Origin: Macrostomum lignano
Lineage: Eukaryota
Direction: 5' to 3'
DNA: 50,528 bases
NCBI GenBank assembly: GCA_002269645.1
Contig: NIVC01004324.1
Location: 1 to 50,528 of the forward strand
Shown here: positions 2,658-50,528 of the stretch, one piece after another
Numbering within the stretch: position 1 is the stretch's first letter
How the letters are laid out: each line of letters opens with the position of its first letter
The notes under the pieces: generated by a model
The model's input: the letters and a program-made list of their open reading frames with translations, nothing else
The model's database searches: none
What the model was told of the DNA's origin: nothing
Program-made: the position numbers and the translations under genes

Positions 2658-3910
2658 TAATAGATAAAATAGTGTAAATAGGCCTACAAATGTTAATTAA
2701 GCCTAATCTCAAATCTCAATCAAATTTAAAAAATCTCTAAAATATGATTTGTCTAACCCTTAGTATTTATGTAGTTCTTAATCATTTTATTATCTGCTAT
2801 TTTGTCATTATAATCTATTTTGTTACTTAATAGGATATCTATGGCTCCTTCTTGGTTCTAGTCACTTTGTTATCTTAATCAATATACAATAACAGGGAGT
2901 CATTTTGTCATTTAATATGGTATCTATGATCCCACTTTGGTTCTAGTCATTTTGCCATCTTAATTTGTATATACTAATTTAAGGGAGTCATTTTGTCATC
3001 TACTAAGCATGTCAATTGTAAGTAAATTAAAGTATAAAGATTGTATATAAAATTTGTATTAGTGTTTGAATTTTTAAAAAAAAATATATTTAAGACGAGT
3101 AGCCATTTTATTGGTGGTTATATTGTTTTAATAGGAAGATAAAGTATCTAAATTTTTTAATAGTTTTGTATGCATTACCATATGTACTAATCTGTGTTGC
3201 AATGCATTGTCATTTACCATTTCACTGATTAGTTGATATGATATCAAAGTATTAAGTAGCTAAGTTCTAGGTATTTCAATATTTGGTCACTTTATCATAA
3301 TATTTTACAAGGCTACTTGTTATACAATATATTTCTTTTATATAAAGGTTTTATTCATATAGGTTTAAGCCTACTATAGCCTCTAGTTTTGTTTAGATAA
3401 TATATAAATCTTTTTTTTTCTAAAACATTAACTTCAGTAAATATATTATAAAATAATGTAACTTTCCCTTCTATTGAGTTTTGATTTTAGTTATAGATAA
3501 TATTTAGTAGCCAACAACAATATTTGCAGTACCTGTCTTGTTATGTCTTTATGCTTATAATCTTCAATAATGCTTAATAGCCAGATTGTTATAATATATT
3601 TCAATATAAATTGTCAAGCAAATCAATAAATATATAATATCAAACCTTGGATAGGTAGGCCTATTGATTCTATAGTTTTGTATAAAATTTGTTTGCATTC
3701 TTGTTAACCCCAAAGCTACTGCACCCTGTTATATATATATATCCTTAGTGCTCTATTTGGGGTATTCCCAATCGTATATATGAGCATATCAACCCCTTAG
3801 CTATTCTGTCCTTTGTTATGGATGTTGACAAAAATTTATTTATTTAGTACCGTTGCATGCATGCACCAGCTGATTGCCAGCTGAGCAGGGCAGTGTCACA
3901 CAGCTCAGCC

Positions 3911-6230
3911 ATGATAGGCGGCCTATTCATCTACAACCACAAAGGCGAGGTGCTAATCTCGCGGGTCTACCGAGACGACATCGGTCGCGAGGCGGTGGAC
4001 GCCTTCAGGGTGAACGTCATTCACGCCAGGCAGCAGGTGCGGTCGCCAGTCAGCAGCATCGGCCGCACCAGCTTCTTCCACGTGAAGCGGTCGAACATCT
4101 GGCTGTGCGCGGTGGCCAAGAAGAATGTCAGCGCATCGCTGGTGTTCCAGTTTCTCTACAAGATGATCGAAGTCATGGTGTCCTACTTCGGCAAGATCAA
4201 CGAGGAGAACATCAAGAATAACTTTGTGCTCATCTACGAGCTGCTTGACGAGCTGCTGGACTATGGCTACCCGCAGAACACCGACACGGGCGTGCTGAAG
4301 ACCTACATCACCCAGCAGGGCGTCAGGGCGCAGACCAAGGAGGAGACCACGAGAATTACCAATCAGGTGGGGTGGGGGAGACTTCATTTACGTAAAGAGC
4401 CTCGACTATTTATTGTAGGGTATCGTAGCGAAGGGAGCCGTCTTTAACGTAGGCATTCTTAGTTAAGTTTGGGAACCTTCGTTAATGTAGGGATCCTTGT
4501 CTAACGTTGAGATTCCTAAATGACGTAGAGAGCCTTCACTAACTTCACTAAGCCTTCATAAATTATTAATATTAATGTTTGAACCTTCAGCTAACCTTAA
4601 TTGACGTAGTGAGCGTTCCGTTGCGTAGACAGCCTTCTATTTTGTCTATTAATTTCAACCGCCCAAGCATCCGTATACCATTGAATATCCCGCAGGTCAC
4701 GGGACAGATTGCCTGGCGCCGGGAGGGCATCAAGTACCGGCGCAACGAGCTGTTCCTTGACGTGATCGAGTCCGTCAACCTGCTGATGTCGCCCCAGGGC
4801 CAGGTGCTGTCCGCCCACGTGTCCGGCCGTGTCCGAATGAAGTCCTACCTGTCCGGCATGCCCGAGTGCAAGTTCGGCATCAACGACAAGGTCGTGGTGG
4901 ACAGCAGGCGCGGCGGCGGCGCTGGCGAAGCCTCGGGAGGCGGCGGGGGCAAGTCCGGCCACATCGCCATCGACGACTGCCAGTTCCACCAGTGCGTGAA
5001 GCTCAGCAAGTTCGACACCGAGCACTCCATCTCGTTCATCCCGCCGGACGGCGAGTTCGAACTCATGACCTACCGGACCACCAAGGACATCAGCCTGCCG
5101 TTCCGGGTCATCCCGTTAGTGCGCGAGACCGGCCGGTCCGGCATGGAGGTCAAGGTGGTGGTCAAGAGCAACTTCAAGCCATCCCTGCTGGCCCAGAAGG
5201 TTGAGGTTCGAATCCCCACCCCGCTGAACACCAGCGGAGTGCAGGTGGTTTGCATGAAGGGCCGGGCCAGGTACAAGGCCTCCGACAACGCCATCGTGTG
5301 GAAGATCAAGCGGATGGGCGGCATGAAGGAGCTGCAGCTGAGCGCCGAGATCGACATGCTCAGCTCCACCGACAAAGCCAAGAAGTGGACCCGGCCGCCC
5401 ATTTCCATGAACTTTGAGGTGGCTATGTCGGATCACTGCTTGCTGGAATCCCACACTGTACATTAGCTACACTGGAATCCCTCACTGTACATTAGCTACA
5501 CTGGAATCCCTCACTGTACATTAGCTACACTGGAATCCCTCACTGTACATTAGCTACACTGGAATCCCTCACTGTACATTAGCTACACTGGAATCCCTCA
5601 CTGTACATTAGCTGCACTGGAATCCCTCACTGTACATTAGCTACATTGGAATTCCACACTGTACATTACTACACTGGAATCCCACACTGTACATTAGCTA
5701 CACTGGAATTCACACTGTACATTAGCTGCATTCGAATCCCACACTGTACATTAGCTGCACTGGAATCCCACACTGTACATTAGCTGCACTGGAATCCCAC
5801 ACTGTACATTAGCTGCACTGGAATCCCACACTGTACATTAGCTACATTGGAATCCCACACTGTACATTAGCTACATTGGAATCCCACACTACATTAGCTG
5901 CACTGGAATCCCACACTACATCAGCTGCACTGGAATCTCACACTGTACATTAGAATCCCATGTACATTAGCTGCATGTGAATCCCACACTACATCAGCTG
6001 CACTGGAATCTCACACTGTACATTAGAATCCCATGTACATTAGCTGCATGTGAATCCCAAACTTGCATCGGAATCTCACACTGAAATTCCCGCAGGTGCC
6101 CTTCGCTCCATCCGGCTTCAAAGTCCGCTACCTAAAGGTGTTCGAGTCCAAGCTGAACTACTCGGATCATGACGTCATCAAGTGGGTTCGGTACATCGGC
6201 AAGAGCGGCTTCTACGAAACCAGGTGCTGA
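3911..6230 (+). CDS. AP2M1: AP-2 complex subunit mu (mu2 adaptin); exons 3911-4366, 4696-5418, 6096-6230; 437 aa
   Basis: Recognisable sequence [25 protein letters not shown]...[23 protein letters not shown]...[11 protein letters not shown]...[47 protein letters not shown]. Both introns are GT-AG, phase 0. Confidence 0.97.
5443..6085. repeat. 29-bp minisatellite (CTACACTGGAATCCCTCACTGTACATTAG)n in AP2M1 intron 2
   Basis: About 20 tandem units, degenerating toward the 3' splice site. Confidence 0.95.
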
Positions 6231-9417: not shown

Positions 9418-12400
9418 CTACTTGTTCAGGAAGAAAAACTGACTGGCAAAGTTGGCCAGGCCGATCAGGATGATGCAGCAGTGAGGCACCAGGCGGCCCA
9501 CCGTCAGGGTGCCGTTCATGCGGGCCTCCAGCAGGGTGATCAGCGGCGGCAGCGTGAAGATGTAAGCCAACCCACACAGAGCCCCGGAGAACCTGTCCGG
9601 TCCGGTCGGGGGGGGGGGTGAGGTGCACTCATAGTAACAGGGTATTTCTAGTTAAGCAACAATGTATTTCTAGCATAGCAACTGAGTTAATTCCAGCGTA
9701 ACAACCGGGTATTTCCAGCATAGCAACCGGGTATTTCTAGCATAGCAACCGGGTATTTCTAGCATAGCAACCGGGTATTCCTAGCATAGCAACCGGGTTA
9801 ATTCCAGTATAGCAACCGGGTTAACTCCAGCATAGTAACAGAGTATTTATTTCTAGCATAGCAACCGGGTGAATTCCAGCATAGCAACCGGTTTAATTCC
9901 AGCATAGCAACCGGGTGAATTCCAGCATAGCAACCGGGTGAATTCCAGCATAGCAACCGGGTTAATTCCAGCATAGTAACAGAGTATTTATTTCTAGCAT
10001 AGCAACCGGGTATTTCTAGCTTAGCAACCGGGTGAATTCCAGCATAGCAACCGGAATAATTCCAGCATAGCAACCAGGTATTTTTAGCATAGCAACCGGG
10101 TATTTTTAGCATAGCAAACGGGAATTTTCAGCATAGCAACATGGTATTTCCGCCTTGGAAACAATAAATCGTATTATGGAAGGGTAACTATAAGGAATAA
10201 CCTTACTGTTACGTTACTAATACTTCAACCGGCTCCCTCCAATCACCTGAGAATGTTGCCAATATTGGGGTAGAACACGGCCACAACAATGGCCACCCCC
10301 ATGACGGACACGTGCAGCACGCTGACGTGCACCCAGCTGGGGTAGACGCTGTGGAACAGGTAGTGCATCAGCTGGGCCCGCAGAATGTACATCAGCAGCG
10401 GGAACACCGTCACCATCTGGACGAACAGAAAGATTCGGGCGGTGAAGGCCAGCACATCCGCGCTGGGGATATTGTCCAGCAGGTTCTGCGGGGTTCGGGT
10501 GGCAGTTCATGTGTTTAACTGGTGTAGTCAGTGTGTTTAACTGGTGCAGTCAGTGTGTTTAACTGGTGCAGTCAGTGTGTTTAACTGGTGTAGTCAGTGT
10601 GTTTAACTGGTGCAGTCTGTGTGTTTAACTGGTGCAGTCAGTGTGTTTAACTGGTGCAGTCAGTGTGTTTAACTGGTGCAGTCAGTGTGTTTAACTGGTG
10701 CAGTCAGTGTGTTTACCTGATGCAGTCTGTGTTTAGCTGGTGCAGTCACAGTGTGTTTACCTGATACAAACTGCGTTTAAATATAGTAGTCAGAGTATTT
10801 ATCACCTGCCCAGCTCACCTGCTCAATGCAGTCCTTAGCCAGCGGGTAGACCGCATAGAACACGAGGCCCACAATAATGTAGGTGATCGAGACGCACACG
10901 TAGGCAATTAGCAGGTCTCGAGTCTAAAAATAGACAGAAAATTTACTGCATTTTGCATTTCGCCTACTGCAAGTAGGATATCAGTATCTTAAACTCCAGA
11001 ATTTTGAACGTGAATTTGCAAAAGCCGCACTGATATCTGGCAAGAGTTGAAATGAAAGTCATTTTGAGTACAGGTAAGCAGCGCGGAATTCTTTGGCAAT
11101 CAGAGCTTGCAAATCACAGAAACTCATAGTCATAAAACTTAAGCCGCAATAAATTCGGACTTGAACGAATTAAATTCCATATACTAAATTCCAACTTAAT
11201 ATTTTCGAGTTACCTAAGCAATGGAAAAAGAGTGTACCTCTGAGCAATATGGGATTACACCATAGCAAAAGACTTAACCCCTTAGCAACAGGATCTACAC
11301 TTTAGCAACAGGATCCAAACCTTAGCAACAGGGTTAAACCTTAGCAACAGGATCCACACCTTAGCAACAGGGTTAAACCTTGGCAACAGGGTTTACACCT
11401 TAGCAACAGGATCTAAACCTTAGCAACAGGGTTTACACCTTAGCAACAGTATCCACACCTTAGCAACAGGGTTACATCTTGGCAACAGGGTTTACACTTT
11501 AGCAACAGGATCTACACCTTAGCAACAGGGTTTACACCTTAGCAACAGGGTTACATCTTGGCAACAGGGTTTACACTTTAGCAACAGGGTTTACACCTTA
11601 GCAACAGGGTTTACACCTTAGCAACAGGGTTTACACTTTAGCAACAGGGTTTACACTTTAGCAACAGGGTTTACACCTTAGCAACAGGGTTTACACCTTA
11701 GCAACAGGGTTTACACCTTAGCAACAGGGTTTACACCTTAGCAACAGGGTTTACACCTTAGCAACAGGGTTACATCTTGGCAACAGGGTTTACACTTTAG
11801 CAACAGGGTTTACACCTTAGCAACAGGGTTTACACCTTAGCAACAGGGTTTACACTTTAGCAACAGGGTTTACACTTTAGCAACAGGGTTTACACCTTAG
11901 CAACAGGTTTACACCTTAGCAACAGGGTTACATCTTAGCAACAGGGTTTACACTCTAGCAACAGGATCTACACCTTAGCAACAGGGTTTACACCTTAGCA
12001 ACAGGGTTTACACCTTAGCAACAGGGTTTACACCTTAGCAACAGGATCCACACCTTAGCAACAGGATCCACATCTTAGCAACAGGGTTTACACGTTAGCA
12101 ACAGGGTTTAAACCTTAGCAAGAGTTAACCCCTTAGCAAAGGGATTACCTTAGCAACAGGATCTGACACCTTAGCAACAGGATCCACACCTTAGGGACAA
12201 GGTTTACCCTAGCAACGGAGCTCCACCTTAGAAACTAATATTTTGTATCCTAGCGTTGGGACTTGATTAAAAATGATACTCCAGATATTCCACTTAAAAA
12301 AACCCGAGCAATATAAAATTTAAGCATAAATTTGTGAAATATTAATTCTTTCGCTCAAGCAGCATTCTTTGAAATTAAAAAAATGATAATCGCAGTTGAA

Positions 12401-15400
12401 AGCTTGAGCTAATAAAAGCCAGTCAAGCCCCAGTCCAGGCGTTCCCTGAGCCGAAATTACATTATTCTGCGGCTGCCTCTGCTCCCGCATCAGGGAGACA
12501 ATGAAGCAGTGGCTAAACAGGGCCAGGGACAACACGCCAGCCATGGACACAAAGCTGGGCGAGAACTCTGAAAGCGGGCGGGTAACAAACAAATTCACGA
12601 CCTGTGTCGGTTCACACTGAACAAGTGACAAACATGCATGCAAGATTGCTAAGTACATGCGGTGAGCTGCGGTGAGCTGGGTGAGAATTGAAAAAAACAC
12701 ATTTGCACCGGCCCAGCATCAAAAGATTTACATTATTCTCTGGCCGCAGCTGGTTCCGCGTCAGCGTGATCACCGCATTGTGGCAGAACAGCGCCAGGGA
12801 CAGCACACCGGTCATGAGGGCGAAGCTCGGCCTCAGCTCTGCAGGGTTGCGGCAGCGGCTGACTGACTGACTGCCTGACTGACTGACTGACTGACTGACT
12901 GACTGACTGCCTGACTGACTGCCTGACTGCCTGACTGACTGACTGCCTGACTGACTGACTGACTGCCTGACTGACTGACTGCCTGACTGCCTGACTGACT
13001 GCCTGACTGACTGCCTGACTGACTGACTGACTGCCTGACTGACTGCCTGACTGACTGCCTGCCTGACTGACTGCCTGACTGCCTGACTGACTGCCTGACT
13101 GCCTGACTGCCTGACTGACTGCCTGCCTGACTGCCTGACTGACTGCCTGACTGACTGACTGCCTGACTGACTGCCTGACTGCCTGACTGACTGACTGCCT
13201 GACTGACTGCCTGACTGACTGACTGCCTGACTGACTGCCTGACTGACTGCCTGCCTGACTGACTGCCTGACTGACTGACTGACTGCCTGACTGACTGACT
13301 GCCTGCCTGACTGCCTGACTGCCTGACTGACTGCCTGACTGCCTGACTGACTGCCTGCCTGACTGCCTGACTGACTGCCTGACTGACTGACTGCCTGACT
13401 GACTGCCTGACTGCCTGACTGACTGACTGCCTGACTGACTGCCTGACTGACTGACTGCCTGACTGACTGCCTGACTGACTGACTGCCTGACTGACTGACT
13501 GCCTGACTGACTGACGGACTGACTGACTGACTGCAATTCACAATCGCAGCTGAGCATTAAGACTATAATAAAGTTTCTAACCACGTCAGACACCTGAAAA
13601 TACGGAGGCTATTTACTCAAAAGCATAAATTTGCACTGGTTAAGTAAATTCGCGTTACGCACTAAGCAAATGAAGTTCTGGCAAAGCGACTTCCAGTCAC
13701 CAGCGCTGCAGCTGTAAAAGCGATATTCGCAGCTACATAAGCTGCCTGCATAACATTGCCAGTAAACACGTGGGCTGCAATGCCTTATTAGCTTGAAAAT
13801 GTTAATATAACCAAAATTGTATACTTGTAGACTGAAGACGGACAAGACAGCATCCGCCAAAGGCCAAAAGACTTCGCAAACATGTGAATTTTGGCTAATT
13901 AAAAAGATAACCAGAGAGAGTGAAAGAAATGGAGTCACAGTTGGAGAGAGTGAAAGAAATGGAGTGACAGTTGGAGAGAGTGAAAGAAATGGAGTGACAG
14001 TTGGAGAGAGTGAAAAAAATGGAGTGACAGATGGAGAGAGTGAAAGAAACGGAGTGACAGTTGGAGAGAGTGAAACAAACGGAGTGACAGTTGGAGAGAG
14101 TGAAACAAACGGAGTGACAGTTGGAGAGAGTGAAACAAACGGAGTCACAGTTGGAGAGAGTGAAAGAAATGGAGTGACAGTTGGAGAGAGTGAAAGAAAC
14201 GGAGTCACAGTTGGAGAGAGTGAAAGAAATGGAGTCACAGCTGGAGAGAGTGAAAGAAATAGAGTGACAGATGGAGAGAGTGAAAGAAACGGAGTGACAG
14301 TTGGAGAGAGTGAAAGAAATGGAGTGACAGTTGAAGAGAGTGAAAGAAATAGGTGGAGAGACAGATGAAGAGTGAAAGCAGAAGCTGAGAGGTGAACAAA
14401 CGGGGAGGCGAGGCTGCACTGAGGCCATTCAAAAGGATGCGAGGCTGCCAGACTCACGCCGGATGACATTGGCAGCATCAGTGGCGCTGAAGTCCAGATG
14501 GAAGCCCCACTGGGCGGCTTTCACGGCAACAAAGACCAGCACAAAGACCACGGCCACGGTGCCGAGAGCGTTGAACTTGGAGAAGAAGCCCGGAGACTTG
14601 ATGCAGACAAGCGGGAACAGCAGGAGGACCAGATAGAACGGCACGGTCTCGGTTTTGCTCCACAGCCGCTGGAACAGAGGCTCGGTGCCGTTTCTGAAGT
14701 CCGGCGGGGCGACGGTGGCGGGAGGCGGCGTGGTGACGTTGGGCAGGCCGGTGGGCTGCACGGGCAGCGGCGGGTAGTTCGGGCACAGCACGTGAAATGT
14801 GCGGTTGCCAACCCGGAATTCGTTCGGGGTGCCGTCAATCTCGGTGACATTGTACAGCTGGCTGTGGATGAAGCAGCCGCCCTGAGGGACCGGGGAGGGG
14901 AGGGGTGCCGTCAATCTCGGTGACATTGTGCAGCTGGCTGTGAATGAAGCAGCCGCCCTGAGGGACCGGGGAGGGGAGGGGTGCCGTCAATCTCGGTGAC
15001 ATTGTGCAGCTGGCTGTGAATGAAGCAGCCGCCCTGAGGGACCGGGGAGGGGAGCCGTCAATCTCGGTGACATTGTGCAGCTGGCTGTGGATGAAGCAGC
15101 CGCCCTGAGGGACCGGGGGGCTGCCAACCACTTCCGTTTCTTAGAAAATTATTTGAAGGCCGGCTTCATGCCAAAACAAACGCTATTGAGACAGGGAGTT
15201 TCTCATTTTATTAGGCATAAAACCCATGGATTTTTAGGGCATTTTAGGCAGAAGAAGGCCAGAAGAGAAGAGCCGGTCTGCTCCCGAGCCCACACAGGCG
15301 CAATAACAACCTGGTAAAGGAAGTTGGACAGCAGCACCCAGTAGACGATGATGGCGCCCAGTAGGGCCACGGCGGAGAACAGCACAGAGACGAGCTCGCC

Positions 15401-17143
15401 GTAGCGGCCCAGGTAAAATTTGCACACGTCAGAGAACTCGGACACTCGAACTCCGCTGCGGCCTGAGGTAAAAATTAATAATTAATATCTAGTAGTGAGT
15501 TATATAGGATTTTAGTAAAACAATAAATTTTGAGAGATCGCTTATGGAGGCCGTAGCCCAGTAGTCTGGTGCGGCGCCCTTACGTGCCAGCGGCCCAGGC
15601 TCGATTCCAAGTGCAGTCGCATTTATTTGGGGCTAAATTGGAATCTCGGCTTGGCTCTGCTCGTGCAATTAGCGGCCTTGAAGGCCAACCCCAAGGCACA
15701 GTGAAGTGTACATGCCTAGCCATCAATAAAGTTATGGCCGCTGTACACTCCTGTGTGGGTGTGTGCCTGTGCGTATGACTGCGTACGCTTGTGTGCCTGC
15801 TCAGGGGAGTCAGCGGAATAGGCAGTAATGCCTCTCGCTGGTTGTGTGACAATGTGGCCTCAGGTGCGCCAGGGTGCGCACAGGCCCCTGCCTATAACTA
15901 AGCCACCACTTACCCAAGTTTGAGTAGCTCCTGAGCACCAGGTAAGCAGTGTAGAATGTGATGCCAGTCATGATCAGCAGCACCACCAGGCTGGTGGCGA
16001 AGCCGGCCTCCTTCACCGCCCAGGGCATGCTCAGCAGCGAGGTGCCCATCATCGTGTTCCAGATGCTGAAGCTGCGGTCGGGTGGGGCGGAGGCATTGGC
16101 GGGTGCTTGTTTGACACAGCTGGGTCACTGGGTCATGGGTTTGGGTCCCTGGGTTATGGATTGGGTCACTGGGTCATGGGTTGGGTCACTCGGTTATGGG
16201 CGGGATCATTGAATCATGGGCTGGGTCACTGGGTCGTGTGTTTGCATCACGAGGTCATGAGTTGTGTCCCAAGGTCACGGGTTATGTCCCAAGGTCATGG
16301 GTAGGATCAATGGGTCATAGGTTGGGTTACTGGGTTATGGGTGGAATCATTGAATCATGGGCAGCGTCACGATGTCATGGTTTGGGTCACTGGGTCATTG
16401 GATTGGGTCACTGGGTCATGGGTTTGGGTCACGAGGTCATTGGTTTGGGTCACGAAGTCATTGGTTTGGGTCACGAGGTCATTGGTTTGGGTCACGAGGT
16501 CATTGGATTGGGTCACTGGGTCATGGGTTGGATCACTGGGTCCGCAGCGATGGTAATCAGTTTCTCCCCTAAAAGTACTCAGTTCTAAAGACCAACGCAA
16601 CGGACAGGATGAAGAACTCCCAGCTCACATGGTGATGATGCTGCTCTGCTTTGAGATCTGCTTGAACGGCAGGATCAGTAGGAACTGCGGCGGCACCACG
16701 TGATGCGGCATAAGCAACTGGCTGTCGGCACCAGGCGCGATCCTGCTGTAGTACTTGTACCTGCTCAGCATGGCGGAGGTCGCCTCCGACACCGCTGGCG
16801 ACGCCGAGGATGGGCCGGGCTCCGCCGATGGCGGCTCCGAGCGGGCGCGGCTCCTCGACTGCTGGCCGTCGGGGACGATGGCCTCGGCGGGGGAGCCGGA
16901 GGCGCCGGGCTGGTCGGGCAGGTAGCTGGAGGCCGGCGCATTGACGGAGCCGTAGCCGATGGGCAGGCGCACCGCGGTGCCCCGCTCCGTCTCGTAGGTG
17001 CGCGCGAAGGATCCGGCGCGGCCGGCGCTGGCCAGAGACGACGACGAAGGCGACAAGAGTGGCGCGTCGGCACCAGAGCGGCCGGATGATCGCTGCTTGC
17101 CGGCAATCAGCAGCTGCTGCCGCTCGGAGGACGGCTGCGACAT
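9418..17143 (-). CDS. SLC38A9: Lysosomal arginine sensor / neutral amino acid transporter SLC38A9; exons (5'->3') 17143-16629, 16071-15914, 15462-15311, 14881-14458, [12838-12732 OR 12567-12461], 10923-10819, 10485-10247, 9592-9418; 624 aa
   Basis: N-terminal Rag-binding motif (RYKYYSRIAP...MPHHVVP), FSIWNTMMGTSLLSMPW, EFSDVCKFYLG, TVPFYLVLLLFPL..KSPGFFSKFNALG, GVLSLALF.H, ARIFLFVQMVTVFPLLMYILR, FSGALCGLAYIFTLP. Exon lengths sum to 1875 nt with all phases consistent. Confidence 0.95.
9640..10150. repeat. 22-bp minisatellite (TAGCATAGCAACCGGGTATTTC)n in SLC38A9 last intron
   Basis: Tandem units visible directly. Confidence 0.95.
10512..10765. repeat. 22-bp minisatellite (GTGTTTAACTGGTGCAGTCAGT)n, intronic
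   Basis: About 11 tandem units. Confidence 0.95.
11275..12230. repeat. 20-bp minisatellite (CTTAGCAACAGGGTTTACAC)n, intronic
   Basis: More than 40 tandem units. Confidence 0.95.
12461..12567 (-). CDS. SLC38A9: SLC38A9 alternative exon 5b (107 nt): (Q)FSPSFVSMAGVLSLALFSHCFIVSLMREQRQPQNN
   Basis: TTTCAG acceptor, AAT|GTAATT donor, phase 1->0, open frame, paralogous to exon 5a. Confidence 0.85.
12732..12838 (-). CDS. SLC38A9: SLC38A9 alternative exon 5a (107 nt): (Q)LRPSFALMTGVLSLALFCHNAVITLTRNQLRPENN
   Basis: CTGCAG acceptor, AAT|GTAAAT donor, phase 1->0. Closer to the vertebrate TM6 segment (recalled as LTGVLTLAFFIHNCIITL). Confidence 0.9.
12859..13533. repeat. Compound tetranucleotide microsatellite (GACT/GCCT)n
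   Basis: Explains the SQSV/RQS pseudo-ORFs. Confidence 0.97.
13914..14365. repeat. 30-bp minisatellite (GAGAGTGAAAGAAATGGAGTGACAGTTGGA)n, intronic
   Basis: About 15 tandem units. Confidence 0.95.
14831..15120 (-). repeat. 4x ~76-bp tandem duplication spanning the intron 3/exon 4 junction of SLC38A9
   Basis: Units start at 14831, 14907, 14983 and 15054 (spacings 76, 76, 71). Each contains the acceptor CCGGTCCCTCAG plus the first ~51 nt of the exon. Confidence 0.95.
15546..15860 (+). mobile_element. tRNA-derived SINE (copy 2), antisense in SLC38A9 intron 2
   Basis: A-box GTAGCCCAGTAG, B-box GGCTCGATTCC, body homologous to 8070-8365. Confidence 0.75.
16120..16545. repeat. ~21-bp degenerate minisatellite (TTGGGTCACGAGGTCATTGGT)n in SLC38A9 intron 1
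   Basis: Direct inspection. Confidence 0.9.
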
Positions 17144-17235
17144 GGACTTCTAGAGCTCGTCTGTCCCGGTGTTTCCTTTTTTAAAAGGTAGTCGGCCTCG
17201 AAAGGCAGGGCGAGTCAGAAACCTGGCTGGAACAT

Positions 17236-18192
17236 TACCAAATTGGTGTACTAGTGAGATGGGTGTACCAAATTGGTGTACTAGTGAGATGGGTGTACCA
17301 AATTGGTGTACTAGTGAGATGGGTGTACCAAATTGGTGTACTAGTGAGATGGGTGTACCAGATTGGTGTACTAGTGAGATGGGTGTACCAGATTGGTGTA
17401 CTAGTGAGATGGGTGTACCAGATTGGTGTACTAGTGAGATGGGTGTACCAGATTGGTGTGCTAGTGAGATGGGTGTACCAGATTGGTATACTAGTGAGAT
17501 GGGTGTATCAGATTGGTGTGCTAGTGAGATGGGTGTACCAAATTGGTGTACTAGTGAGATGGGTATACCAGATTGGTATACTAGTGAGATGGGTGTATCA
17601 GATTGGTGTGCTAGTGAGATGGGTGTACCAAATTGGTGTACTAGTGAGATGGGTGTACCAGATTGGTATACTAGTGAGATGGGTGTACCAGATTGGTGTG
17701 CTAGTGAGATGGGTGTACCAGATTGGTGTGCTAGTGAGATGGGTGTATCAGATTGGTGTGCCATTGAGATGGGTGTACCAGATTGGTATACTAGTGAGAT
17801 GGGTGTACCAGATTGGTGTGCTAGTGAGATGGGTGTACCAGATTGGTATACTAGTGAGATGGGTGTATCAGATTGGTGTGCTAGTGAGATGGGTGTACCA
17901 GATTGGTGTACTAGTGGTAGTGAGATGGGTGTACCAAATTGGTGTACTATTGAGATGGGTGTACCAGATTGGTATACTAGTGAGATGGGTATATCAGATT
18001 GGTGTGCTAGTGAGATGGATGTACCAAATTGGTGTACTATTGAGATGGGTGTACCAGATTGGTGTACTAGTGAGATGGGTGTACCAGATTAGTGTGCTAG
18101 TGAGATGGGTATACCAGATTGGTATACTAATGAGATGGGTGTACCAGATTGATGTACTAGTGAAATGGATGTATCAGATTGGTGTACTAGTA
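17236..18192. repeat. 30-bp minisatellite (CTAGTGAGATGGGTGTACCAGATTGGTGTA)n upstream of the SLC38A9 ATG
   Basis: About 32 units; source of the WCTSEMGVPD and VRWVYQIGVL pseudo-ORFs. Confidence 0.97.
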
Positions 18193-37800: not shown

Positions 37801-40800
37801 GACGGCCCTTTGACTTGTTCAATTTCTACAACAGTACCGGGTGCGGAGCCTCACAGACGTGCGCAAAATTGTAAGGTTGCCTCTGGCATCTGTGGCTGCT
37901 GTTTGTTATATCTATTTCAATGTTGGGCTTGCTCTGATGGCGAGCCAAGTTGATTCTATATATTTTCTCGCCCTGTAGGCTTTAGGTCAGGGCCATATAC
38001 TTACGGTATTATCATCTACGCCATCTCCCCTTTCCAGTCATTGTTCCTTATTTACTCAAGAAACTGAACTTTCGGCTGCCCAGTCGGCTGTACTGAAACC
38101 GAACTGGCGGGATATTTTTGTCGACCTGGCACTAACGCGAGGTCTCTCCGGTGGCCTCTGGTCCTCAAGTCTCTGATTGTCCGTTTGGTACGTTCTTGAT
38201 TCACCAGCTTGTTAGTCGCCTGTTGCAGATAATCGGCGTTCCATGGTAGTGTTGGCCGGACGAAGATACGATTGCTATGATGGCGAGCTTGCTATTATTC
38301 GGTCATTAGCTAGCTTGATCAGGTAGTCGCGGTGTTTGCCTACCTCCACCACCACGCCCCTCCGTTGCCACAGCTTGGTTGTCGGGTCTTGTAGAACCAT
38401 AGTCGAGCCAATTCTGATTCGGCCAAGACTCTTCTACAGAATGCCTTCTGCCATCCTGCCCTTGTCTATGTCGTTGTTTCGATAGTCCCAAGATCCTCTG
38501 ATAATCTTCTTGGCAGACTTAACTGCGGATTCAGCCCTTCCATTGCTTTGGTGATGGTAAGGTGATGAGAATCTGGACTCAACTCCCCATCTCTTCAGAA
38601 AATTTACAAAGACGTTGGCTTTGAAGTGAGAGCCTGAGTCTGACCAGAAGGATTCCGGTACGGCTGTCTGACGAAATAGCTCACGGCATGCATTGATAAG
38701 CTTGTAAACCGGAGCGTTTTGTCCGAAACTCCAGACGTTGATCCAGCCTGAGTAGCAATCCACTATCACTAGCAATTGCCTGCCGCGAAATTCACAAAAG
38801 TCCGCGTGAACTTCCTGGAAACACCTTCCTGGCGGATTTCTCTGCATCATCGACTCTCTGGTTTGACTTGGCCGGTTTTTTCTTGGCATGCCTTGCATTG
38901 TTTTATTGTGTCATCTATTTGACGTTCCATGCCGGGCCAATAGACTGTCATCCTTGCTCTTGCTTTGGTTTTAGTAGCACCTTGATGACTCGCGTGCAAA
39001 GTTCTCAAAACTTCTCTTTGTATTTCTTTAGGAATTATGCATCGACATCCATTGAGAATGATCCCATCTTCGACAACGAGCTTATGTCTGGCGTGCCAAT
39101 ATGGTCTTAGATTAACTGGCAGATTAGCATTGTCGTTTGGAAATCCATTTCCATTCTCGATAACTCGGATAAGGTCTTGCATTTCTGCATCATTCTTCAC
39201 TTGTTCTTGTAGTTTCTTCATGTTAACATCAATTTCCGTATCTTCTATTGCCATCATAAGTAAATTCACGCTGCTTACCGCTTGACTCTCGTCAATCTGG
39301 TCTTCCTCAGTCGCATTTGCAATGGGGACCCTTGATAGTGCATCGGCGTCTTCGTTGTCTTTGCCTCGAACCCATCTAGCATCATAGTTATAACGATTAA
39401 GCTTGGCGCGAAGGCGCTGTAACCGTGGGTTCTCAATTTGGTCCAGTTGATAGCTATTTAGGATCGGAATAAGTGGTTTGTGATCAAGACAAATTTCTTA
39501 TTTAATGCGATTCCGCTCTCGTCACATCGATTAAGAAATTCACGAACAGCTTGGACGTGGCTGTCGTAGTCGGCGCTTGCAACTATGCAGTCGTCCACGA
39601 GTATTTTTAAAACCCTGCAGAACACTGTCCAGTCTCCTGTTGTAATATTCAGAGATAGAGCTGATGCCAAAAGGTGCCATTCGAAACATATACTTCGTCA
39701 TTGTCACGGCTGCCGTTTTCCCTGCCGTTGACATGCCAGAATGAAGTGTCGTTGGCGCTGATCCCATAGTCCGAAGGATTTTCTGGTCGATGCTCTGCTT
39801 CGTTTGTGTGACTGAAAAATCAACAGCTTCAAAATGCAAGTTGGTCTGTGCCTCACCTGCACAGCATTCGATTGACTTCTCCCCATGTTCACTATGCTAT
39901 TCAATCAGCAAGTTTTGAAGTTTTGCAGTTTTACCATTTAATAGAGCAGATGTGCAAGGAGTTGGGGATAAACTTTCAGCTCCTTTGCAACAACTCTCAT
40001 ACACGTAACTCTGAATTTCAGCATCTAAAAATGAGAACGCCTTCGAGAGCTTCGAATCAATCACCAAAGTATCGAATCCCGTCGTGAGCACAGCTGGGTT
40101 GCCCCTGCAGGCCGATGGCTTCTGGACCGGCGCCCGGCTGACGGTGAGGACAGGGGCAACTGGCAGTCTGGGTTTAAACAAGGACATTTAATAATAGTTA
40201 ATAGCAATGCTTGCAATCTTTTTAGATGACACTGACCATGAAGAGCATACTGCATAGCATTTTGATGCTTAATTACATCCCGAACATGCTTTTTGCTGCT
40301 GAAGATCTTAACTTTAATCTGGAGTTTTACAACTACGATACCAAAAAATGGGACATGACTTCAAATGATTTGAAAACTGGAAACCCGGTGAGTTTTTGAT
40401 TTTGATTTTAAAAGGGGATGTCAGCTCAGTCCGAAAATAAAAGCGGCTTATCGAAGCGAGGGCTCTCTGCCGGAGTCCAGTATTGAACAGACAGTGGGAA
40501 ATATGAGATGAGTAAGAGATGAGTCAGCTTATGGCCCTCTTAAATGGTGTTTTTAATGGTGGTGGCCACCATGGCTGAGGCAGTTCTGTGCTAGTGTACA
40601 TGCCCTGACTTTCTAATCTTCAGGCATATGCACTCTCTGAGCTTTGGGGTTTGACCCTCAGGGGTGTGAATTGCACGAGAGCGCCAGGAAATTTTCAAAC
40701 ACGACCACCAAATAACTGTGGTAGCGTACGGAATCGAACCAGGTTAGATATTAGATATATATTATATTATATTACATTATATTATATAGCACAAGCCTAG

Positions 40801-43800: not shown

Positions 43801-46800
43801 ATAGAAAAATCACGATGTTGGGGGTGCCAGCTAGTCGGGGCGCGTGGTGGCACTCCGTTGAAGGTCCCGAAGGTCGTCCAGACAGAGCTGAATGCTGAAC
43901 ATGGTGCAGGACCATTGTATAATATGCAGACATGCCTGGTTTGGTGCCTTGACAGAAAATTCACGATGTTGGGGGTGCCAGTTCGTCGGGGCCGCGTGGT
44001 GGCACTCCGTTGAAGGTCCCGAAGGTCGCTTGTATGTCTACAGGTCAACCTAGAGGGTCGCCGTCATCCATCTCATTCACCGATTATGTCTACTGACTGA
44101 ATGCTGCATGCAGAAGAGGATTCTTCCATTTCAGTTTTGGGAACGCAGCCGTCTCTGCGATGCCGATCGGGTGCTTTTGTTGAAGGTCCCGACGGTCGCC
44201 GCCGATGCTCCAGACGGTGATGAAGGGGACCCTAGTTCCTGGGATGCTGAGAAGAAAGGCCTCTCCGACAGATGGATCCAGATTATTGAGCCAATATGGA
44301 TTCACTATAAAGGTTTATACAGTGTAGTGTTGGTTGTCCTTGCCACCAGTGTCTTCGACAAGAATCGTTGAATATCTCGACGATGCTGACGTCGGATGAC
44401 TTTGAAAGTTAATTCGTTGGAAAGGGGGGAAATTTTGACCCAAATGGTGGACTTTTACGAAAATCGGTTATTCGGTTTGCGAGCTATGGTGAAATTGGTT
44501 GTGTGTATTTGTTATACACCCCCATGGTCTTTCCCCATGGGGAAAAAAAGCGTAGTCTTTCTACTGTTAATGGCATTCCTTTAAATTCATAAAATAAAAC
44601 ATGAAAATCACAATTTAGCAAAAAATATTTATTACCCGAGTTTAGAATGAATAGCTATATAGTTGTTATAGTCGATGGTGCTGGCTACCACCCGATTATT
44701 AATTTAACGAAATTTATCGTGGTCAGTCCGCAAAAAGTCTAGTCTATGACAGTGAAGGCCGTCAGTCCGTTTTTTGGTTGCACTTCATTCATGAAGCATG
44801 GATACCGCGCACTCCATATTATTGTGCTTCGATGGTCGATGGGGCCGTAATTTTCATCGATACCCTCGTGCGACCAGCTTTTGTACCTGCAACCTCTTTG
44901 CTGATCTCTCCTTCCACTAGACGCGTCATGACGTTTATCGCAAGCAAGCTATGCTGTTAGTGAATCGACCTTCAGTTTAAATAAAACCAATGAAAATTGG
45001 CTTCAGTACCAAAAATATTATTATTATTAAGAATATTAGGAATATTATTAATTTATTCTTCATTGACTAAAAAGTGACTTCAACAGAGAGCAGAGAGTTG
45101 GCTTTAATCGCATGTCCTGAAACTCTGTTCCAGGCTCCAGTAAAGATACCGAAGTCGACAATTTTCACCCCGGTGTACTACCTCATCGTTAACCTGGCCT
45201 ACACGGACAAACTGCGGTTGACGACAACATGGGATCGCAGCTTAGGAATCAAAATGGATCTTTTCGTCCGAGCGAAAAACCTAACAGGCAAGATGCCAAA
45301 GCTTGTAATTGCTTCCATTATTACCAGCAACATAAATTCATAATTAATTCTGACCCTCAATTTACTGTTTGGCAATACGCTTTGCAGAGATTAATCAGGC
45401 AATCTGCAATGGCACTCAATCAGTAACGCTCGAGCACCCCTACCTCGGATCCGCCACCCTGCCTTGCTTCCGAAACTCCCTGGTCGTGTACCAAAAACTG
45501 TCCCCGAACCTGGAGACCGGACGAACCCCAGTCGACTATCGCACTGGATTCGCTCTGGACCGACCCGCCATGGACTTCAACTTCACGCAAGCTGACCAGA
45601 TGAGCTTCTGGACCGGACTCGACTTCCTCGAGCTGCTGCCGACATACTTTGCGAGTCAGTGGCCGCTGACACTGAGGCTGGAGGCCACGAACTCGCAGGG
45701 ACTCGGCAAGTATGTCGAGTGCAAAGAGTGGTGGGTCGGGTCTCGAGCGGGCGGCTACCCGATGCACGCGAAAGACTGCCGGACGGGAACTCTGGACGAG
45801 TACACCTTTGTTGAGCTGAACAACGCTCAGTTCGGCCTGTTCTCAAACCTGTCTTGTGCCCAGCCGCTCTCACCGTGGTGGCAAAGTCAGTGCGATGGCA
45901 AAAATCTTGTCAAGCTGGCAGCAGATTCAAATGGAGCTCCTCGATGGATGCCAGACCTGCCTGCCGACAACGGTGTGTCGGTTCGAATGCGGCTGTTTGC
46001 GCCGAAGATGATCCCAAAGGGTGAGAAACACACTGTTTACACTCAAAGTTGCGTTATATAGCTAGACTCTCTGGTTCATTAATTATTGCTCAACTCATTT
46101 GCCTTTACCTATCTCGATTCGAATTCAGCAACAGAATCAGGCCAGGTGAGCGATGCGTGCACTATGGATGCCGAGTGCTCAAGTGAGAATATGACCGTGT
46201 GCATTCCTCGTGGCTCAGCGCTCACGCCTCAGTGCGGCTGCGCGAATCTTCAAGACCAGGGCCAGCCAGTCTGCACCATCACGGTGGACATGAGCATCGT
46301 TGCTTTTAACGTTACTTTCGACCCAGTGCCGGTTCGCGGCTGCGCCAGTCGGTACACGGCAACAATCCGTCTGAAGCACGCAAGTGGCAGCGCCGACATT
46401 CCAGAGGCTGCTCCGCCAACAGTTCTGGCGAATTTTTTCTCTTACTTTCTGAACAAGTCGTCAAGCGTGTATCCTCCAGTTGACCAGGAGTTTTACCTCC
46501 AACACAACCCTGTGACTGTCATTGAAGGCAACCTGCAAGGCTCATATAAGCTTTATGAGGAGTTTGAGTTCGTCATAACCGCCAACTTCACGATGCCGGA
46601 AGGAGGCCAGTGCGTCTCAGCGTCCTACCTGTGCATCGGCTTCAGCGCGTCGGAAAATGAAACGGTGCGCGACTCCGACCCGACTAATAACGCTTTCTGC
46701 ATGGACATTGACAGCGTGAAGGTGTGTCAGCCAATAGGAGACACGGAAATATCCAATTTTACATTGTTCCATTTGAGTCCGAATCCTTTGGTGAGACATG

Positions 46801-49800: not shown

Positions 49801-50528
49801 CCAAACGATACCTGCATTCACATGTACTACAATCAGACCAGCCTAATTAATGAAATTTTCGGTGGCGCATAATTCCTGCCGTTCCATCGCAACACCGAAC
49901 AGTCCAGCCTATACACAGGTCAGTCCCTCTAACTTGCGAATCACCTGGAAGCGAGATCTATCAAAAGTAGGCGTCCATTCTGTCTTGATTTTCGCCTACA
50001 ACAATGTGAGCAATGAATCGGCGCAAACATTTGCCACCGTGATTGACATCCTTGCTACAAGCCAAGGCTGAGACTGTTACTCGGACTCATCTTCATTGCA
50101 AGTGTCATCAGTGCAGACAATCAGGAGGTGAGCAAATCAACCTCACTGCCGTGGCGCCATACAACTGCTCCAAGCTGACCAACATCAGCACATACTGGAC
50201 CATCATTGCTGAACAATCATCTACCCAGCTTCCTCTGTGCACTGACAACTCCGATCAGTGCTTGGTTCAGCGTCGGATGTTGCCATACGGGCTGTACAAT
50301 GTTCTCATTCACTGCCGAGCTGACTGTGGATGCTGCTATGGCAGAGACTGCGTGATATTGCTGAACGTTCAAGACTCCATTGAGTCTAGAAGCTATTACT
50401 GGTCCGGAATATGTTTCATTCAATCAACCTTCGTGCTAAATGCGTCTGCGACGGCCACGGACTTTGACGTGGAAGATGGAGATCTTAGCGGCATGACGTT
50501 TCAGTGGAGCTGCTTTAGCCTGAAGAGT
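28816..50528 (+). CDS. Polycystin-1-like (PKD/REJ) multidomain protein, 3'-incomplete; exons 28816-28903, 30627-31082, 31322-31542, 31629-31770, 33666-34073, 34194-34472, 40022-40143, 40226-40387, 45134-45287, 45388-46020, 46129-47205, 47424-47858, 47961->50528 (last exon has apparent frameshifts)
   Basis: Hydrophobic signal peptide (RLAFLACCLAALLLPAVLG); F5/8C-like modules ending IKIEFIG and FKLHGC; C-type lectin (CYF...LC...W...HVIC); Cys-containing PAN-like exon; fibrinogen-C-like (FWTGLDFL..L...LRLEA...WWQSQC); EGF-like; PKD repeats (THTFNAPGVYDIHVLAS, AHSYSTAGNYTVIVNASN); REJ-like start (LPYGLYNV..., FVLNAS...DFD...FQWSC). Phases are consistent across all junctions. Exons 7-9 are less certain. 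Confidence 0.8.
29335..30626. repeat. 20/21-bp minisatellite (GAGTCCCAATCACCTGCAGC / ...CTGCAAGA)n ending exactly at the exon-2 acceptor of the PKD1-like gene
   Basis: About 60 units; the last unit's CTGCAG is the functional acceptor. Confidence 0.95.
32110..32650 (-). mobile_element. 3' fragment of a non-LTR retrotransposon (C-terminal CCHC-like zinc knuckle)
   Basis: SHGCFARHRYL...CPFCLSRVENAEHFICEC resembles the GHG...CxxC...HxxxxC motif at the end of LINE ORF2. Confidence 0.65.
35019..35265. repeat. 83-bp tandem repeat x~3
   Basis: Units start at 35019, 35102 and 35185. Confidence 0.9.
35300..37725 (+). mobile_element. Degenerate RTE-like LINE (APE endonuclease + partial RT)
   Basis: GTLNCRTL, NTCFRKP, QLDHVLV and LRSDYRLL (endonuclease); AHIVAVPKKPG...HRGICL...KLVNRMLLSR (RT N-terminal domains); GATGAT-type tail at ~37700-37725; many stops, frameshifts and an internal deletion. 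Confidence 0.75.
37771..38035 (-). mobile_element. Probable 3' LTR (38023->37771, TG...CA) with polypurine tract GGAAAGGGGAGA (38035-38024)
   Basis: PPT immediately followed by TG, downstream of the Gypsy integrase on the same strand. The CA end position is less certain. Confidence 0.6.
38290..39845 (-). mobile_element. Ty3/Gypsy (Mag-like) pol fragment: RT, RNase H, integrase; internally deleted
   Basis: RMAPFGISS...VDD (RT); DHKPL...RLQR...DADALSR (RNase H); HASHQG...VYWPGM...CKAC and VHADF...SDSG...SNGRAESAVK (integrase). Domain order is RT-RH-INT. Confidence 0.9.
41263..44969 (-). pseudogene. Degenerate Crypton-like tyrosine recombinase (DUF3504-like), apparently intron-containing, interrupted by a piggyBac
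   Basis: Fragments YxPSTI (~44800); PLKNIEVTFCNAFVHGRG (in frame only when joined across the TTAA); ARIYE...IC; LLP...HLFPRL; GDNYLQRFILNLSDKVGLSKAYTN..SVRS; AAGHNLADIMSVTGQISERTTRRY. These resemble the RG...TNHSLR...TGHxS...Y motifs of Crypton recombinases. Stops and frameshifts are present. Confidence 0.6.
42091..44566 (-). mobile_element. piggyBac-derived element with TTAA TSD, internal deletion and large internal inverted repeat
   Basis: TTAA at 42087-42090 and 44567-44570; TIR CAGTAGAAAGAC (compare T. ni piggyBac CCCTAGAAAGATA); asymmetric internal IR AAAGACCATGGGGGTGTAT. Transposase C-terminus at 43081-43720 (VMLLSTMH...GKP...YNSTKSGTD, plus Cys-rich CxxC...CxxC...C...HC...CxxC domain). 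Confidence 0.9.

What the first reader, a model, noticed from the sequence alone, without database searches (positions are those of the whole stretch)
12461..12838. Mutually exclusive exon pair encoding alternative TM6 segments of the mTORC1 arginine sensor SLC38A9
Two paralogous exons of exactly 107 nt have identical phases (1->0), intact AG/GT sites and AAT|GTAA donors, separated by 164 nt. Including both or neither shifts the frame, which is the classic mutually exclusive arrangement. The DNA has diverged strongly while GVLSLALFxH is retained, implying purifying selection on both. The segment corresponds to TM6, which in LeuT-fold transporters forms part of the substrate site. 5a keeps the vertebrate-like TG...HN, while 5b has AG...HC. 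The gene could therefore yield two sensors with different substrate or ion specificity. I know of no such exon pair in vertebrate SLC38A9 but cannot search the literature.
Basis: partly seen in the sequence, partly recalled or inferred. Interest (0 to 1): 0.85.

Follow-up and report, generated by a model that had tools for sequence, protein, structure and literature searches.

The report
Alternative TM6 exons in flatworm SLC38A9
A flatworm gene for the lysosomal amino-acid sensor SLC38A9 carries two interchangeable copies of the exon that builds its sixth membrane helix. The same arrangement recurs in sea stars, acorn worms, lancelets and molluscs and always changes the same pocket-lining residue, but use of the second copy in this worm has not yet been shown.

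Summary
The window is contig NIVC01004324.1 of Macrostomum lignano. On the minus strand it carries the SLC38A9 orthologue Mlig026656.

Exons 5a (12838-12732) and 5b (12567-12461) are both 107 nt, have AG/GT sites and the same phase, and lie 164 nt apart. Including both or neither gives a premature stop. Each encodes the whole of TM6.

Every public protein model uses 5a, and I found no 5b transcript or protein. Three lines of evidence still favour 5b as a maintained coding exon:
- It is intact in all three homeologous loci.
- It has the fewest lineage-specific substitutions of the three Macrostomum copies.
- It shares derived residues (FSP…HCF) with the only exon 5 of an old Macrostomum paralogue.

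The same 107-nt exon is tandemly duplicated in echinoderms, a hemichordate and molluscs. RefSeq lists equal-length isoform pairs that differ only in this exon in those groups and in amphioxus.

In all 11 pairs the residue equivalent to zebrafish Cys363 differs. Cys363 is the TM6 contact of the autoinhibitory N-plug.

Verdict: a probable mutually exclusive exon pair, a new and unannotated member of a recurrent cluster that I could not find described in the literature. Different substrate specificity is untested.

The parts
9418..17143 (-). SLC38A9 orthologue of Macrostomum lignano (BOX15_Mlig026656g1/g3; protein P0121, 624 aa). Coding exons: 17143-16629, 16071-15914, 15462-15311, 14881-14458, 12838-12732 (5a) or 12567-12461 (5b), 10923-10819, 10485-10247, 9592-9418 (includes the stop).
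   Evidence: Splice sites and translation. Locus L004 is identical to the window's gene range and the contig length equals the window length. Homology.
14458..14881 (-). Exon 4 (424 nt): luminal loop, TM5 and the start of loop 5-6. Its donor CGGC|gtgagt leaves one base of a split codon, which completes to CAG (Gln) with the AG at the start of either 5a or 5b.
   Evidence: The acceptor at 14881 agrees with the deposited protein.
12732..12838 (-). Exon 5a (107 nt), the canonical TM6 version (…TGVLSLALFCHNAVITL…). All deposited M. lignano models use it. It is the copy most similar to the nemertean, brachiopod and planarian exons.
12568..12731 (-). Intron of 164 nt between the two alternative exons. 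Both of its ends are U2-type GT…AG. It shows no unusual RNA structure.
12461..12567 (-). Exon 5b (107 nt), the divergent TM6 version (…AGVLSLALFSHCFIVSL…). It is not used in any deposited model. It has a better polypyrimidine tract than 5a and the same weak AAT|gtaa donor.
10819..10923 (-). Exon 6 (105 nt; TRDLLIAY…, TM7), the common downstream acceptor for 5a and 5b.

Best explanation
What it is: 5a and 5b are tandem duplicates of the ancient 107-nt exon that encodes TM6 of SLC38A9. That exon covers the end of loop 5-6, TM6a, the unwound hinge, TM6b and the start of loop 6-7. They most likely act as a mutually exclusive pair.

How exclusivity would work: exon 4 is joined to either 5a or 5b, and that exon to exon 6. 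Transcripts with both or neither shift the frame and acquire an early stop, so they would be removed by nonsense-mediated decay (inferred).

The two products:
- 5a gives the canonical transporter, with His-Asn-Ala at the start of TM6b.
- 5b gives a variant, His-Cys-Phe. It replaces a nearly invariant Asn and the residue equivalent to zebrafish Cys363, which lines the cytosolic vestibule and hydrogen-bonds the autoinhibitory N-plug.
- The two isoforms are therefore expected to differ in gating, N-plug docking and/or substrate handling (inferred, untested).

History (inferred): the exon duplicated in the Macrostomum lineage before the gene duplicated. The paralogue (Mlig002873/Mlig024480) kept only the 5b-type exon. 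This gene kept both.
For: Anatomy: equal length, equal phase, AG/GT sites, and a frame that is disrupted by both or neither.

Homology far above chance.

TM6 assignment: the AlphaFold model of P0001 has mean pLDDT 78, and 85-92 over residues 401-440. Helices 422-432 and 436-443 both lie inside the exon's residues 417-452. The best PDB fold matches are 7KGV and 6C08, with target-normalised TM-score 0.84-0.87.

Constraint on 5b:
- It is intact in three homeologous loci. The only difference is one synonymous change, against 4 synonymous changes in 5a and 22 variable columns in 307 flanking intron columns.
- dN/dS between 5a and 5b is 0.40, with dS about 0.9.
- Lineage-specific nucleotide changes are 9 for 5b, 19 for 5a and 23 for the paralogue's constitutive exon. 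The relative-rate test gives p = 0.02 for 5b against the paralogue exon.
- Under substitutions alone at 0.44 per site, an exon keeps its AG, GT and open frame only about 11% of the time.

Link to the paralogue:
- 5b and the paralogue's single exon are reciprocal best matches and share the derived states FSP, Ser7 and His-Cys-Phe.
- They group with 68% bootstrap, against 7% and 4% for the alternatives.
- The two whole proteins are sisters at 100% bootstrap.

Precedent:
- Equal-length RefSeq isoform pairs or triplets differ only in this exon in Branchiostoma, Ptychodera, Patiria, Asterias, Acanthaster, Lytechinus, Antedon, Apostichopus, Mya and Ruditapes.
- Tandem 107-nt copies with AG/GT sites were verified in the DNA of Patiria, Ptychodera, Mya and Lottia.

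Functional link:
- The Cys363 position differs in all 11 pairs.
- Cys363 binds the Ile84 carbonyl of the N-plug (PMC9994763).
- TM6b lines the arginine site, and the backbone oxygen of A357 is a predicted Na1 ligand (10.1101/288233).
Against: - There is no transcript or protein evidence for 5b. All four deposited M. lignano proteins of this gene family member use 5a.
- Six constructed full-length variants, five of them carrying 5b, are absent from the protein collection. A 5b-centred homology search returned nothing useful.
- The homeolog comparison has little power: about 3.5 changes are expected in 5b at the local intron rate and 1 is seen, P about 0.14.
- 5b replaces an Asn that is conserved in at least 90% of 42 orthologues. 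That could mean loss of function rather than a new function.
- The (5b, paralogue) grouping rests on 35 residues and 68% bootstrap.
- Both donors are weak (AAT|gtaaat and AAT|gtaatt).
- The N-plug tip residues of zebrafish (S80, H81) are not conserved in Macrostomum, so the N-plug link may not carry over.
Confidence: 0.65

Rival explanations
1. 5b is a silent relic, a duplicated pseudo-exon. It is never or almost never spliced in, and the gene makes only the 5a protein.
For: Every deposited model uses 5a. No isoform-B protein is on record. 5b lacks the nearly invariant Asn. The homeologs are too similar to prove constraint.
Against: 5b is the slowest-evolving of the three Macrostomum copies: 9 unique changes against 19 and 23. 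It has no stop or indel, and both splice sites are intact in three loci despite about 34% nucleotide divergence from 5a. The same His-Cys-Phe type is the only TM6 of a full-length paralogue that is kept in three copies. Duplicates of this exon are annotated as alternative isoforms in many other animals.
Confidence: 0.22
2. 5b works as a poison exon. It is included after 5a (junction 12732>12567), shifts the frame, and triggers nonsense-mediated decay to lower SLC38A9 output. It does not encode an alternative protein.
For: Including both exons creates a stop inside 5b, well upstream of the last junctions. At 164 nt the intron is long enough for 5a-5b splicing. No RNA structure or incompatible splice-site type enforces exclusion.
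Against: A poison exon needs no conserved protein sequence. Yet 5b keeps 19/35 residues, with dN/dS 0.40 and conserved G, LSLALF, H and P.NN. It also resembles the coding exon of the paralogue.
Confidence: 0.1
3. The similarity is a chance match or an assembly duplication.
For: The introns of this gene are full of tandem repeats, so local mis-assembly is conceivable in principle.
Against: The match is 19/35 identical against a window-wide maximum of 11/35 for unrelated frames. The same pair, with the same 271-nt spacing, occurs on three separate contigs that differ by point changes. The copies are 34% diverged, which is not what a collapsed or duplicated read pile would give.
Confidence: 0.01

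Closest known systems
RefSeq X1/X2 isoform pairs of SLC38A9 in invertebrates (Branchiostoma, Ptychodera, Patiria, Asterias, Acanthaster, Lytechinus, Antedon, Apostichopus, Mya, Ruditapes)
   Same: It is the same exon. In the DNA checked (Patiria, Ptychodera, Mya) the copies are in tandem, 107 nt long, with the same phase and AG/GT sites. In all these species the isoforms have equal length and differ only in this exon. In every pair the residue equivalent to zebrafish Cys363 differs.
   Different: In those species one copy has His-Asn-Ala or His-Asn-Gly. The other has His-Asn-Cys, His-Met-Cys or Gln-Asn-Cys. Macrostomum 5b has His-Cys-Phe. The exon tree groups copies mostly by lineage, so the Macrostomum duplication looks independent. 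Copy order also differs: the Ala type comes first in Patiria, Ptychodera and Macrostomum, and last in Mya and Lottia. The M. lignano 5b exon is not annotated and has no transcript support in the data I could reach.
Mutually exclusive exons from tandem exon duplication as a class (prediction criteria of Pillmann et al., PMC3228551; surveys PMC5740500 and PMC8373072). Textbook examples from my own knowledge: SLC25A3 3A/3B, CACNA1C 8/8a, sodium-channel 5N/5A.
   Same: The exons are neighbours, homologous, of equal length and equal phase, and sit in a membrane transporter. They replace one transmembrane segment. Mutually exclusive exons are reported to be enriched in transporters and channels (PMC8373072).
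   Different: No known exclusivity mechanism other than the reading frame is evident here. The intron is not too short, both introns are U2-type, and no docking or selector structure was found.
Zebrafish and human SLC38A9, the lysosomal arginine sensor of mTORC1 (PDB 6C08, 7KGV)
   Same: It is orthologous: about 40-45% identity over the transporter core. The WNTMMGTS motif of TM1 and the N-terminal RY.YYSR…P.HV.P motif are invariant. The fold matches with target-normalised TM-score 0.84-0.87.
   Different: All vertebrate proteins recovered carry only the His-Asn-Cys type. Their genomes were not scanned for a hidden second copy. The N-plug tip residues are not conserved in Macrostomum. No function has been tested in any flatworm.
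Macrostomum paralogue Mlig002873g1 / Mlig024480g1,g2 (P0003, P0123, P0124)
   Same: It is the sister gene (100% bootstrap) with the same exon structure. Its exon 5 is 107 nt, ends AAT AAT|gt, and carries the 5b-type FSP…His-Cys-Phe signature.
   Different: It has a single exon 5. Its flanking introns, about 335 and 125 nt, leave no room for a second copy.

Membership tests
SLC38A9 orthologue (AAAP/SLC38 family, LeuT fold) | Aa_trans transporter domain and LeuT-like fold | tested here: met
   Pfam PF01490, E = 7e-32. The AlphaFold model's best PDB matches are 7KGV and 6C08, target-normalised TM-score 0.84-0.87.
SLC38A9 orthologue (AAAP/SLC38 family, LeuT fold) | Closest relatives are SLC38A9 proteins and not other SLC38 members | tested here: met
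   Nearly all named hits among the 120 listed are SLC38A9 / 'neutral amino acid transporter 9'; the rest are unnamed or hypothetical proteins. The only PDB hits at E < 1e-20 are SLC38A9, at 2e-127.
SLC38A9 orthologue (AAAP/SLC38 family, LeuT fold) | Cytosolic N-terminal motif (the Rag-binding / N-plug region) and the WNTMM-GTS motif of TM1 | tested here: met
   R128, Y132, P146, H148, P151, W176, N177, T178, G181 and S183 are invariant in 42 orthologues including this one. The N-plug tip residues S80 and H81 of zebrafish are not conserved.
SLC38A9 orthologue (AAAP/SLC38 family, LeuT fold) | Lysosomal arginine sensing and mTORC1 activation | not testable with these tools
   Inferred from orthology only.
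Mutually exclusive exon cluster (criteria of PMC3228551) | Neighbouring exons of the same length in the same gene | tested here: met
   107 and 107 nt, 164 nt apart, with no other exon between them.
Mutually exclusive exon cluster (criteria of PMC3228551) | Conserved splice sites and the same reading frame | tested here: met
   Both exons have cag|AG…AAT|gtaa and start with two bases of a split codon. Both are intact in three loci.
Mutually exclusive exon cluster (criteria of PMC3228551) | Sequence homology between the exons | tested here: met
   19/35 residues and 71/107 nucleotides match, against a background maximum of 11/35.
Mutually exclusive exon cluster (criteria of PMC3228551) | Exactly one of the exons is present in mature transcripts | not testable with these tools
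   No transcript data could be reached. The frame argument (both or neither gives a stop) is met.
Mutually exclusive exons controlled by competing RNA structures (docking and selector sites; PMC6071210) | Conserved complementary intronic elements, or an unusually stable structure | tested here: not met
   Folding of 12440-12860 gives z = 0.02 against shuffles. The only inverted repeat is weak, 17 nt at 76%. The homeologs are too similar for a covariation test.
Mutually exclusive exons by steric hindrance or U2/U12 incompatibility | An intron too short to splice, or splice sites of two different spliceosome types | tested here: not met
   The intron is 164 nt, and both flanking introns are GT-AG with U2-like donors. 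The branch point has not been mapped.

The most novel reading that the evidence does not exclude
The TM6 exon of SLC38A9 is a hotspot of tandem duplication in animals. It is duplicated in echinoderms, hemichordates, cephalochordates, molluscs and macrostomid flatworms. It is single in a jellyfish and a nemertean, and apparently in vertebrates. Whether the duplication arose repeatedly or was retained from an early bilaterian, every pair toggles the residue that docks the autoinhibitory N-plug: a small Ala/Gly against Cys, or Phe in Macrostomum. On this reading, alternative splicing gives these animals two lysosomal nutrient sensors with different gating or mTORC1 set-points, and vertebrates have lost that layer of regulation.
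Probability: 0.3. Interest if true: 0.75.

Novelty: new member of a known kind. Interest (0 to 1): 0.55.

Why it matters
SLC38A9 is the only known transporter-receptor that couples lysosomal arginine to mTORC1. All mechanistic work uses vertebrate proteins that have one TM6.

If invertebrates really make two TM6 versions, evolution has already run the mutagenesis experiment. The variable residue is the one published TM6 contact of the N-plug. An Ala-for-Cys swap at position 363 in the zebrafish or human protein would therefore be a direct and cheap test of the ball-and-chain model.

For M. lignano, a regeneration and stem-cell model, this would add an unannotated isoform of a growth-control gene. 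It also illustrates sub-functionalisation: one paralogue kept both exon types, and the other kept only the divergent one.

More generally, it is a clean case of the same exon being duplicated in several phyla.

Tried and rejected
Searches for 5b transcripts or proteins:
1. A homology search with a 161-residue query centred on 5b returned 88 candidates and one irrelevant hit. It did not even return the known 5a protein, so it says nothing.
3. Exact look-up of six constructed full-length variants, five with 5b and one with 5a (with either exon-4 acceptor, either allele, or the truncated UniProt form), found none in the collection. This also rejects my first exon-4 acceptor at 14857 in favour of 14881.
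I modelled the 5a protein instead.

Mechanism of exclusivity:
5. I looked for RNA structure or docking and selector elements and found nothing above background.

Other checks:
6. There is no third copy of the exon in the window.
7. The paralogue locus has no second copy.
8. Measuring constraint from the homeologs: whole-gene blastn mismatch rates are inflated by the intronic satellites. The local alignment is clean but too short for significance.
9. The three-branch dN/dS estimates from 35 codons were unstable, so I report raw counts and the relative-rate test instead.
10. Loci for Branchiostoma and Lingula were not on record, so the exon order in amphioxus is unknown.
11. Literature searches for SLC38A9 together with mutually exclusive exons or tandem exon duplication found no description of this event.
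Full report
**1. What is in the sequence**

Read on the minus strand, the region holds two 107-nt segments, 12838-12732 (5a) and 12567-12461 (5b). Each is preceded by cag and followed by AAT|gtaa. They are separated by 164 nt.

Stop-free frames and splice-site inspection give a nine-exon gene if 5a and 5b are both counted:
- 17143-16629
- 16071-15914
- 15462-15311
- 14881-14458
- 5a or 5b
- 10923-10819
- 10485-10247
- 9592-9418

With either 5a or 5b the frame stays open to the normal stop, giving a 624-aa protein. With both, a stop appears inside 5b. With neither, a stop appears in exon 6.

The two exons share 71/107 nucleotides and 19/35 residues. No unrelated 35-residue frame anywhere in the window exceeds 11/35.

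**2. Origin and identity**

The best protein hits are three 99-100% identical Macrostomum lignano proteins (BOX15_Mlig026656g1-3). Below them come SLC38A9 orthologues from all over the animal kingdom, at about 40-50% identity.

The window is the whole contig NIVC01004324.1 of assembly GCA_002269645.1, and the gene range matches my model.

Evidence that the protein is the flatworm orthologue of SLC38A9:
- It has the Aa_trans domain.
- It aligns with the zebrafish SLC38A9 structure at E = 2e-127.
- It keeps the invariant N-terminal RY.YYSR…P.HV.P motif and the WNTMMGTS motif of TM1.
- Its AlphaFold model (mean pLDDT 78) matches 7KGV and 6C08 best.

Its role as an arginine sensor is inferred, not tested.

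**3. What the exon encodes**

Both peptides align to zebrafish residues 344/346-377. In the model, residues 417-452, which are the residues encoded by exon 5a, contain helix 422-432, a three-residue break, and helix 436-443. The exon is therefore TM6a, the hinge and TM6b, plus short stretches of the loops on either side.

Published structures give this segment several roles:
- R344 and P348 are part of the luminal gate, the backbone oxygen of A357 is a predicted Na1 ligand, and TM6b lines the arginine site (10.1101/288233).
- Cys363 on TM6 hydrogen-bonds the Ile84 carbonyl of the N-plug (PMC9994763).

At the start of TM6b, 5a reads H-N-A and 5b reads H-C-F. 5b therefore changes an Asn conserved in at least 90% of 42 orthologues, as well as the Cys363 position.

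**4. Is 5b used?**

I could not obtain direct evidence.
- All deposited M. lignano proteins of this gene use 5a.
- Six constructed full-length variants, five of them carrying 5b, are not in the protein collection.

The indirect evidence favours a maintained coding exon.
- (a) The pair is present and intact on all three homeologous contigs. 5a differs by 4 synonymous changes and 5b by 1 synonymous change, with no amino-acid change in either. By contrast, 22 of the 307 flanking intron columns vary. This is suggestive but not significant on its own.
- (b) dN/dS between 5a and 5b is 0.40, with dS near 0.9.
- (c) A 54%-identical paralogue (P0003 and its copies) has a single 107-nt exon 5 with no room for a second. 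That exon and 5b are reciprocal best matches and share FSP, Ser7 and His-Cys-Phe, which are derived states at positions conserved elsewhere.
- (d) 5b and the paralogue exon group together in 68% of bootstraps, against 7% and 4% for the alternatives. The two whole proteins are sisters at 100%.
- (e) Counting lineage-specific nucleotide changes among the three copies gives 5a 19, 5b 9 and paralogue 23. Whatever the topology, 5b has changed less than a sister exon that is certainly in use (p = 0.02 against the paralogue exon, 0.09 against 5a). A neutrally decaying copy should have changed the most.

The simplest history is this: the exon duplicated in the Macrostomum lineage, the gene then duplicated, and the paralogue lost the canonical copy.

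**5. The wider picture**

The 90% clusters of several orthologues contain RefSeq isoforms of identical length. Comparing them shows that they differ only in this exon:
- Branchiostoma lanceolatum and the B. floridae hybrids
- Ptychodera flava
- Patiria, Asterias (two species) and Acanthaster
- Lytechinus (two species)
- Antedon
- Apostichopus
- Mya arenaria
- Ruditapes philippinarum, which has three variants

In genomic DNA the copies are tandem, each 107 nt, with AG/GT sites and the same phase:
- Patiria has 2 copies.
- Ptychodera has 2 copies.
- Mya has 3 copies, one more than its two equal-length isoforms account for.
- Lottia gigantea has 2 copies, one absent from the deposited model.

A nemertean (Lineus) and a jellyfish (Rhopilema) have one 107-nt copy. 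All vertebrate proteins recovered carry one type.

The exon tree is weak, but it groups copies mainly by lineage. Within echinoderms, type-specific subclades span classes. Copy order also differs between Ambulacraria and molluscs. So there were either several independent duplications or one old duplication blurred by co-evolution. I cannot decide between these.

Across 11 pairs the only position that always differs is the Cys363 equivalent. It is Ala or Gly in one copy and Cys in the other, and Ala against Phe in Macrostomum. These 11 pairs represent about five independent lineages at most.

**6. Mechanism**

Shown:
- The reading frame forbids productive transcripts with both or neither exon.
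- The exon replaces the whole of TM6.

Inferred:
- Nonsense-mediated decay removes the aberrant combinations.
- Regulated splice-site choice selects 5a or 5b. Both donors lack the usual G at -1 and +5, and 5b has the better polypyrimidine tract.
- The isoforms differ in the TM6b surface that faces the arginine/N-plug vestibule.

I found no sign of RNA-structure control, steric hindrance or U12 sites.

The N-plug tip residues are not conserved in Macrostomum. The link to N-plug docking is therefore stronger for the deuterostome pairs than for this worm.

**7. Novelty and verdict**

Mutually exclusive exons from tandem duplication are a well-known kind and are common in transporters (PMC3228551, PMC5740500, PMC8373072).

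I found no paper describing such an event in SLC38A9. The isoforms are nevertheless already present in RefSeq models of other invertebrates.

In M. lignano 5b is unannotated. I rate it a probable real alternative exon (0.65). The main rival is a silent relic (0.22). The interest is moderate, and it lies mostly in the recurrent, position-specific pattern across phyla rather than in this single locus.

Noticed in passing
window 3857-5466 (+): Two adjacent open frames match Clat_adaptor_s (E = 2.5e-6) and Adap_comp_sub (E = 6e-74). This looks like an adaptor-protein complex medium (mu) subunit gene lying about 4 kb from the end of SLC38A9, in tail-to-tail orientation.
   Followed up: partly
window 45369-50528 (+): A series of long open frames, one with a PKD domain (E = 6.5e-15), runs off the end of the contig. 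It is probably a large extracellular PKD/REJ-type gene.
   Followed up: partly
window 38850-39497 (-): A retrotransposon integrase fragment (Integrase_H2C2, E = 2.7e-16). GC-rich open frames without Pfam hits lie nearby at about 33.5-37 kb.
   Followed up: partly
window 9630-17500, introns of the SLC38A9 gene: Almost every intron is filled with satellite-like tandem arrays. Examples are (CTGA)n, about 675 nt at 12859-13533, ending about 20 nt upstream of the 5a acceptor; a 20-mer repeated 49 times at 11251-12216 downstream of 5b; a 30-mer at 13914-14350; and 22-23-mers at 9630-10150 and 10502-10763. Array lengths differ between the homeologs, whose gene spans are 7.7, 10.7 and 10.9 kb.
   Followed up: no
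window 14826-15118 (-): A 76-nt tandem repeat (3.9 copies, 96% matches) overlaps the 5' end of exon 4. It repeats the acceptor plus the first codons (…PQGGCFIHSQLHNVTEIDG…). Several near-identical candidate acceptors and in-frame repeat units therefore lie just upstream of the annotated exon start at 14881.
   Followed up: no
P0002 (UniProt A0A1I8GFM3, 894 aa): This older M. lignano model of the same gene contains an insertion of about 270 residues unrelated to SLC38A9, and a repeated exon-3 segment. It looks like a chimeric prediction across a mobile element.
   Followed up: no
L010 5494-5600 (Lottia gigantea) and L005 51652-51758 (Mya arenaria): These are intact extra 107-nt copies of the TM6 exon. 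The Lottia copy is absent from the deposited protein, and the Mya copy is not accounted for by the two equal-length isoforms. Both are of a Gln-Asn-Ser type, which also occurs in Ruditapes isoform X3.
   Followed up: partly
L001 (paralogue locus NIVC01001965.1): The Macrostomum paralogue uses only the His-Cys-Phe type of TM6, so it lacks the near-universal Asn. It may be a functionally shifted SLC38A9-like transporter in its own right.
   Followed up: partly
tool behaviour: A 161-residue query that shares two long exact blocks with P0001 yielded only 88 candidates and did not return P0001. Negative results from short queries to that search should not be trusted.
   Followed up: no
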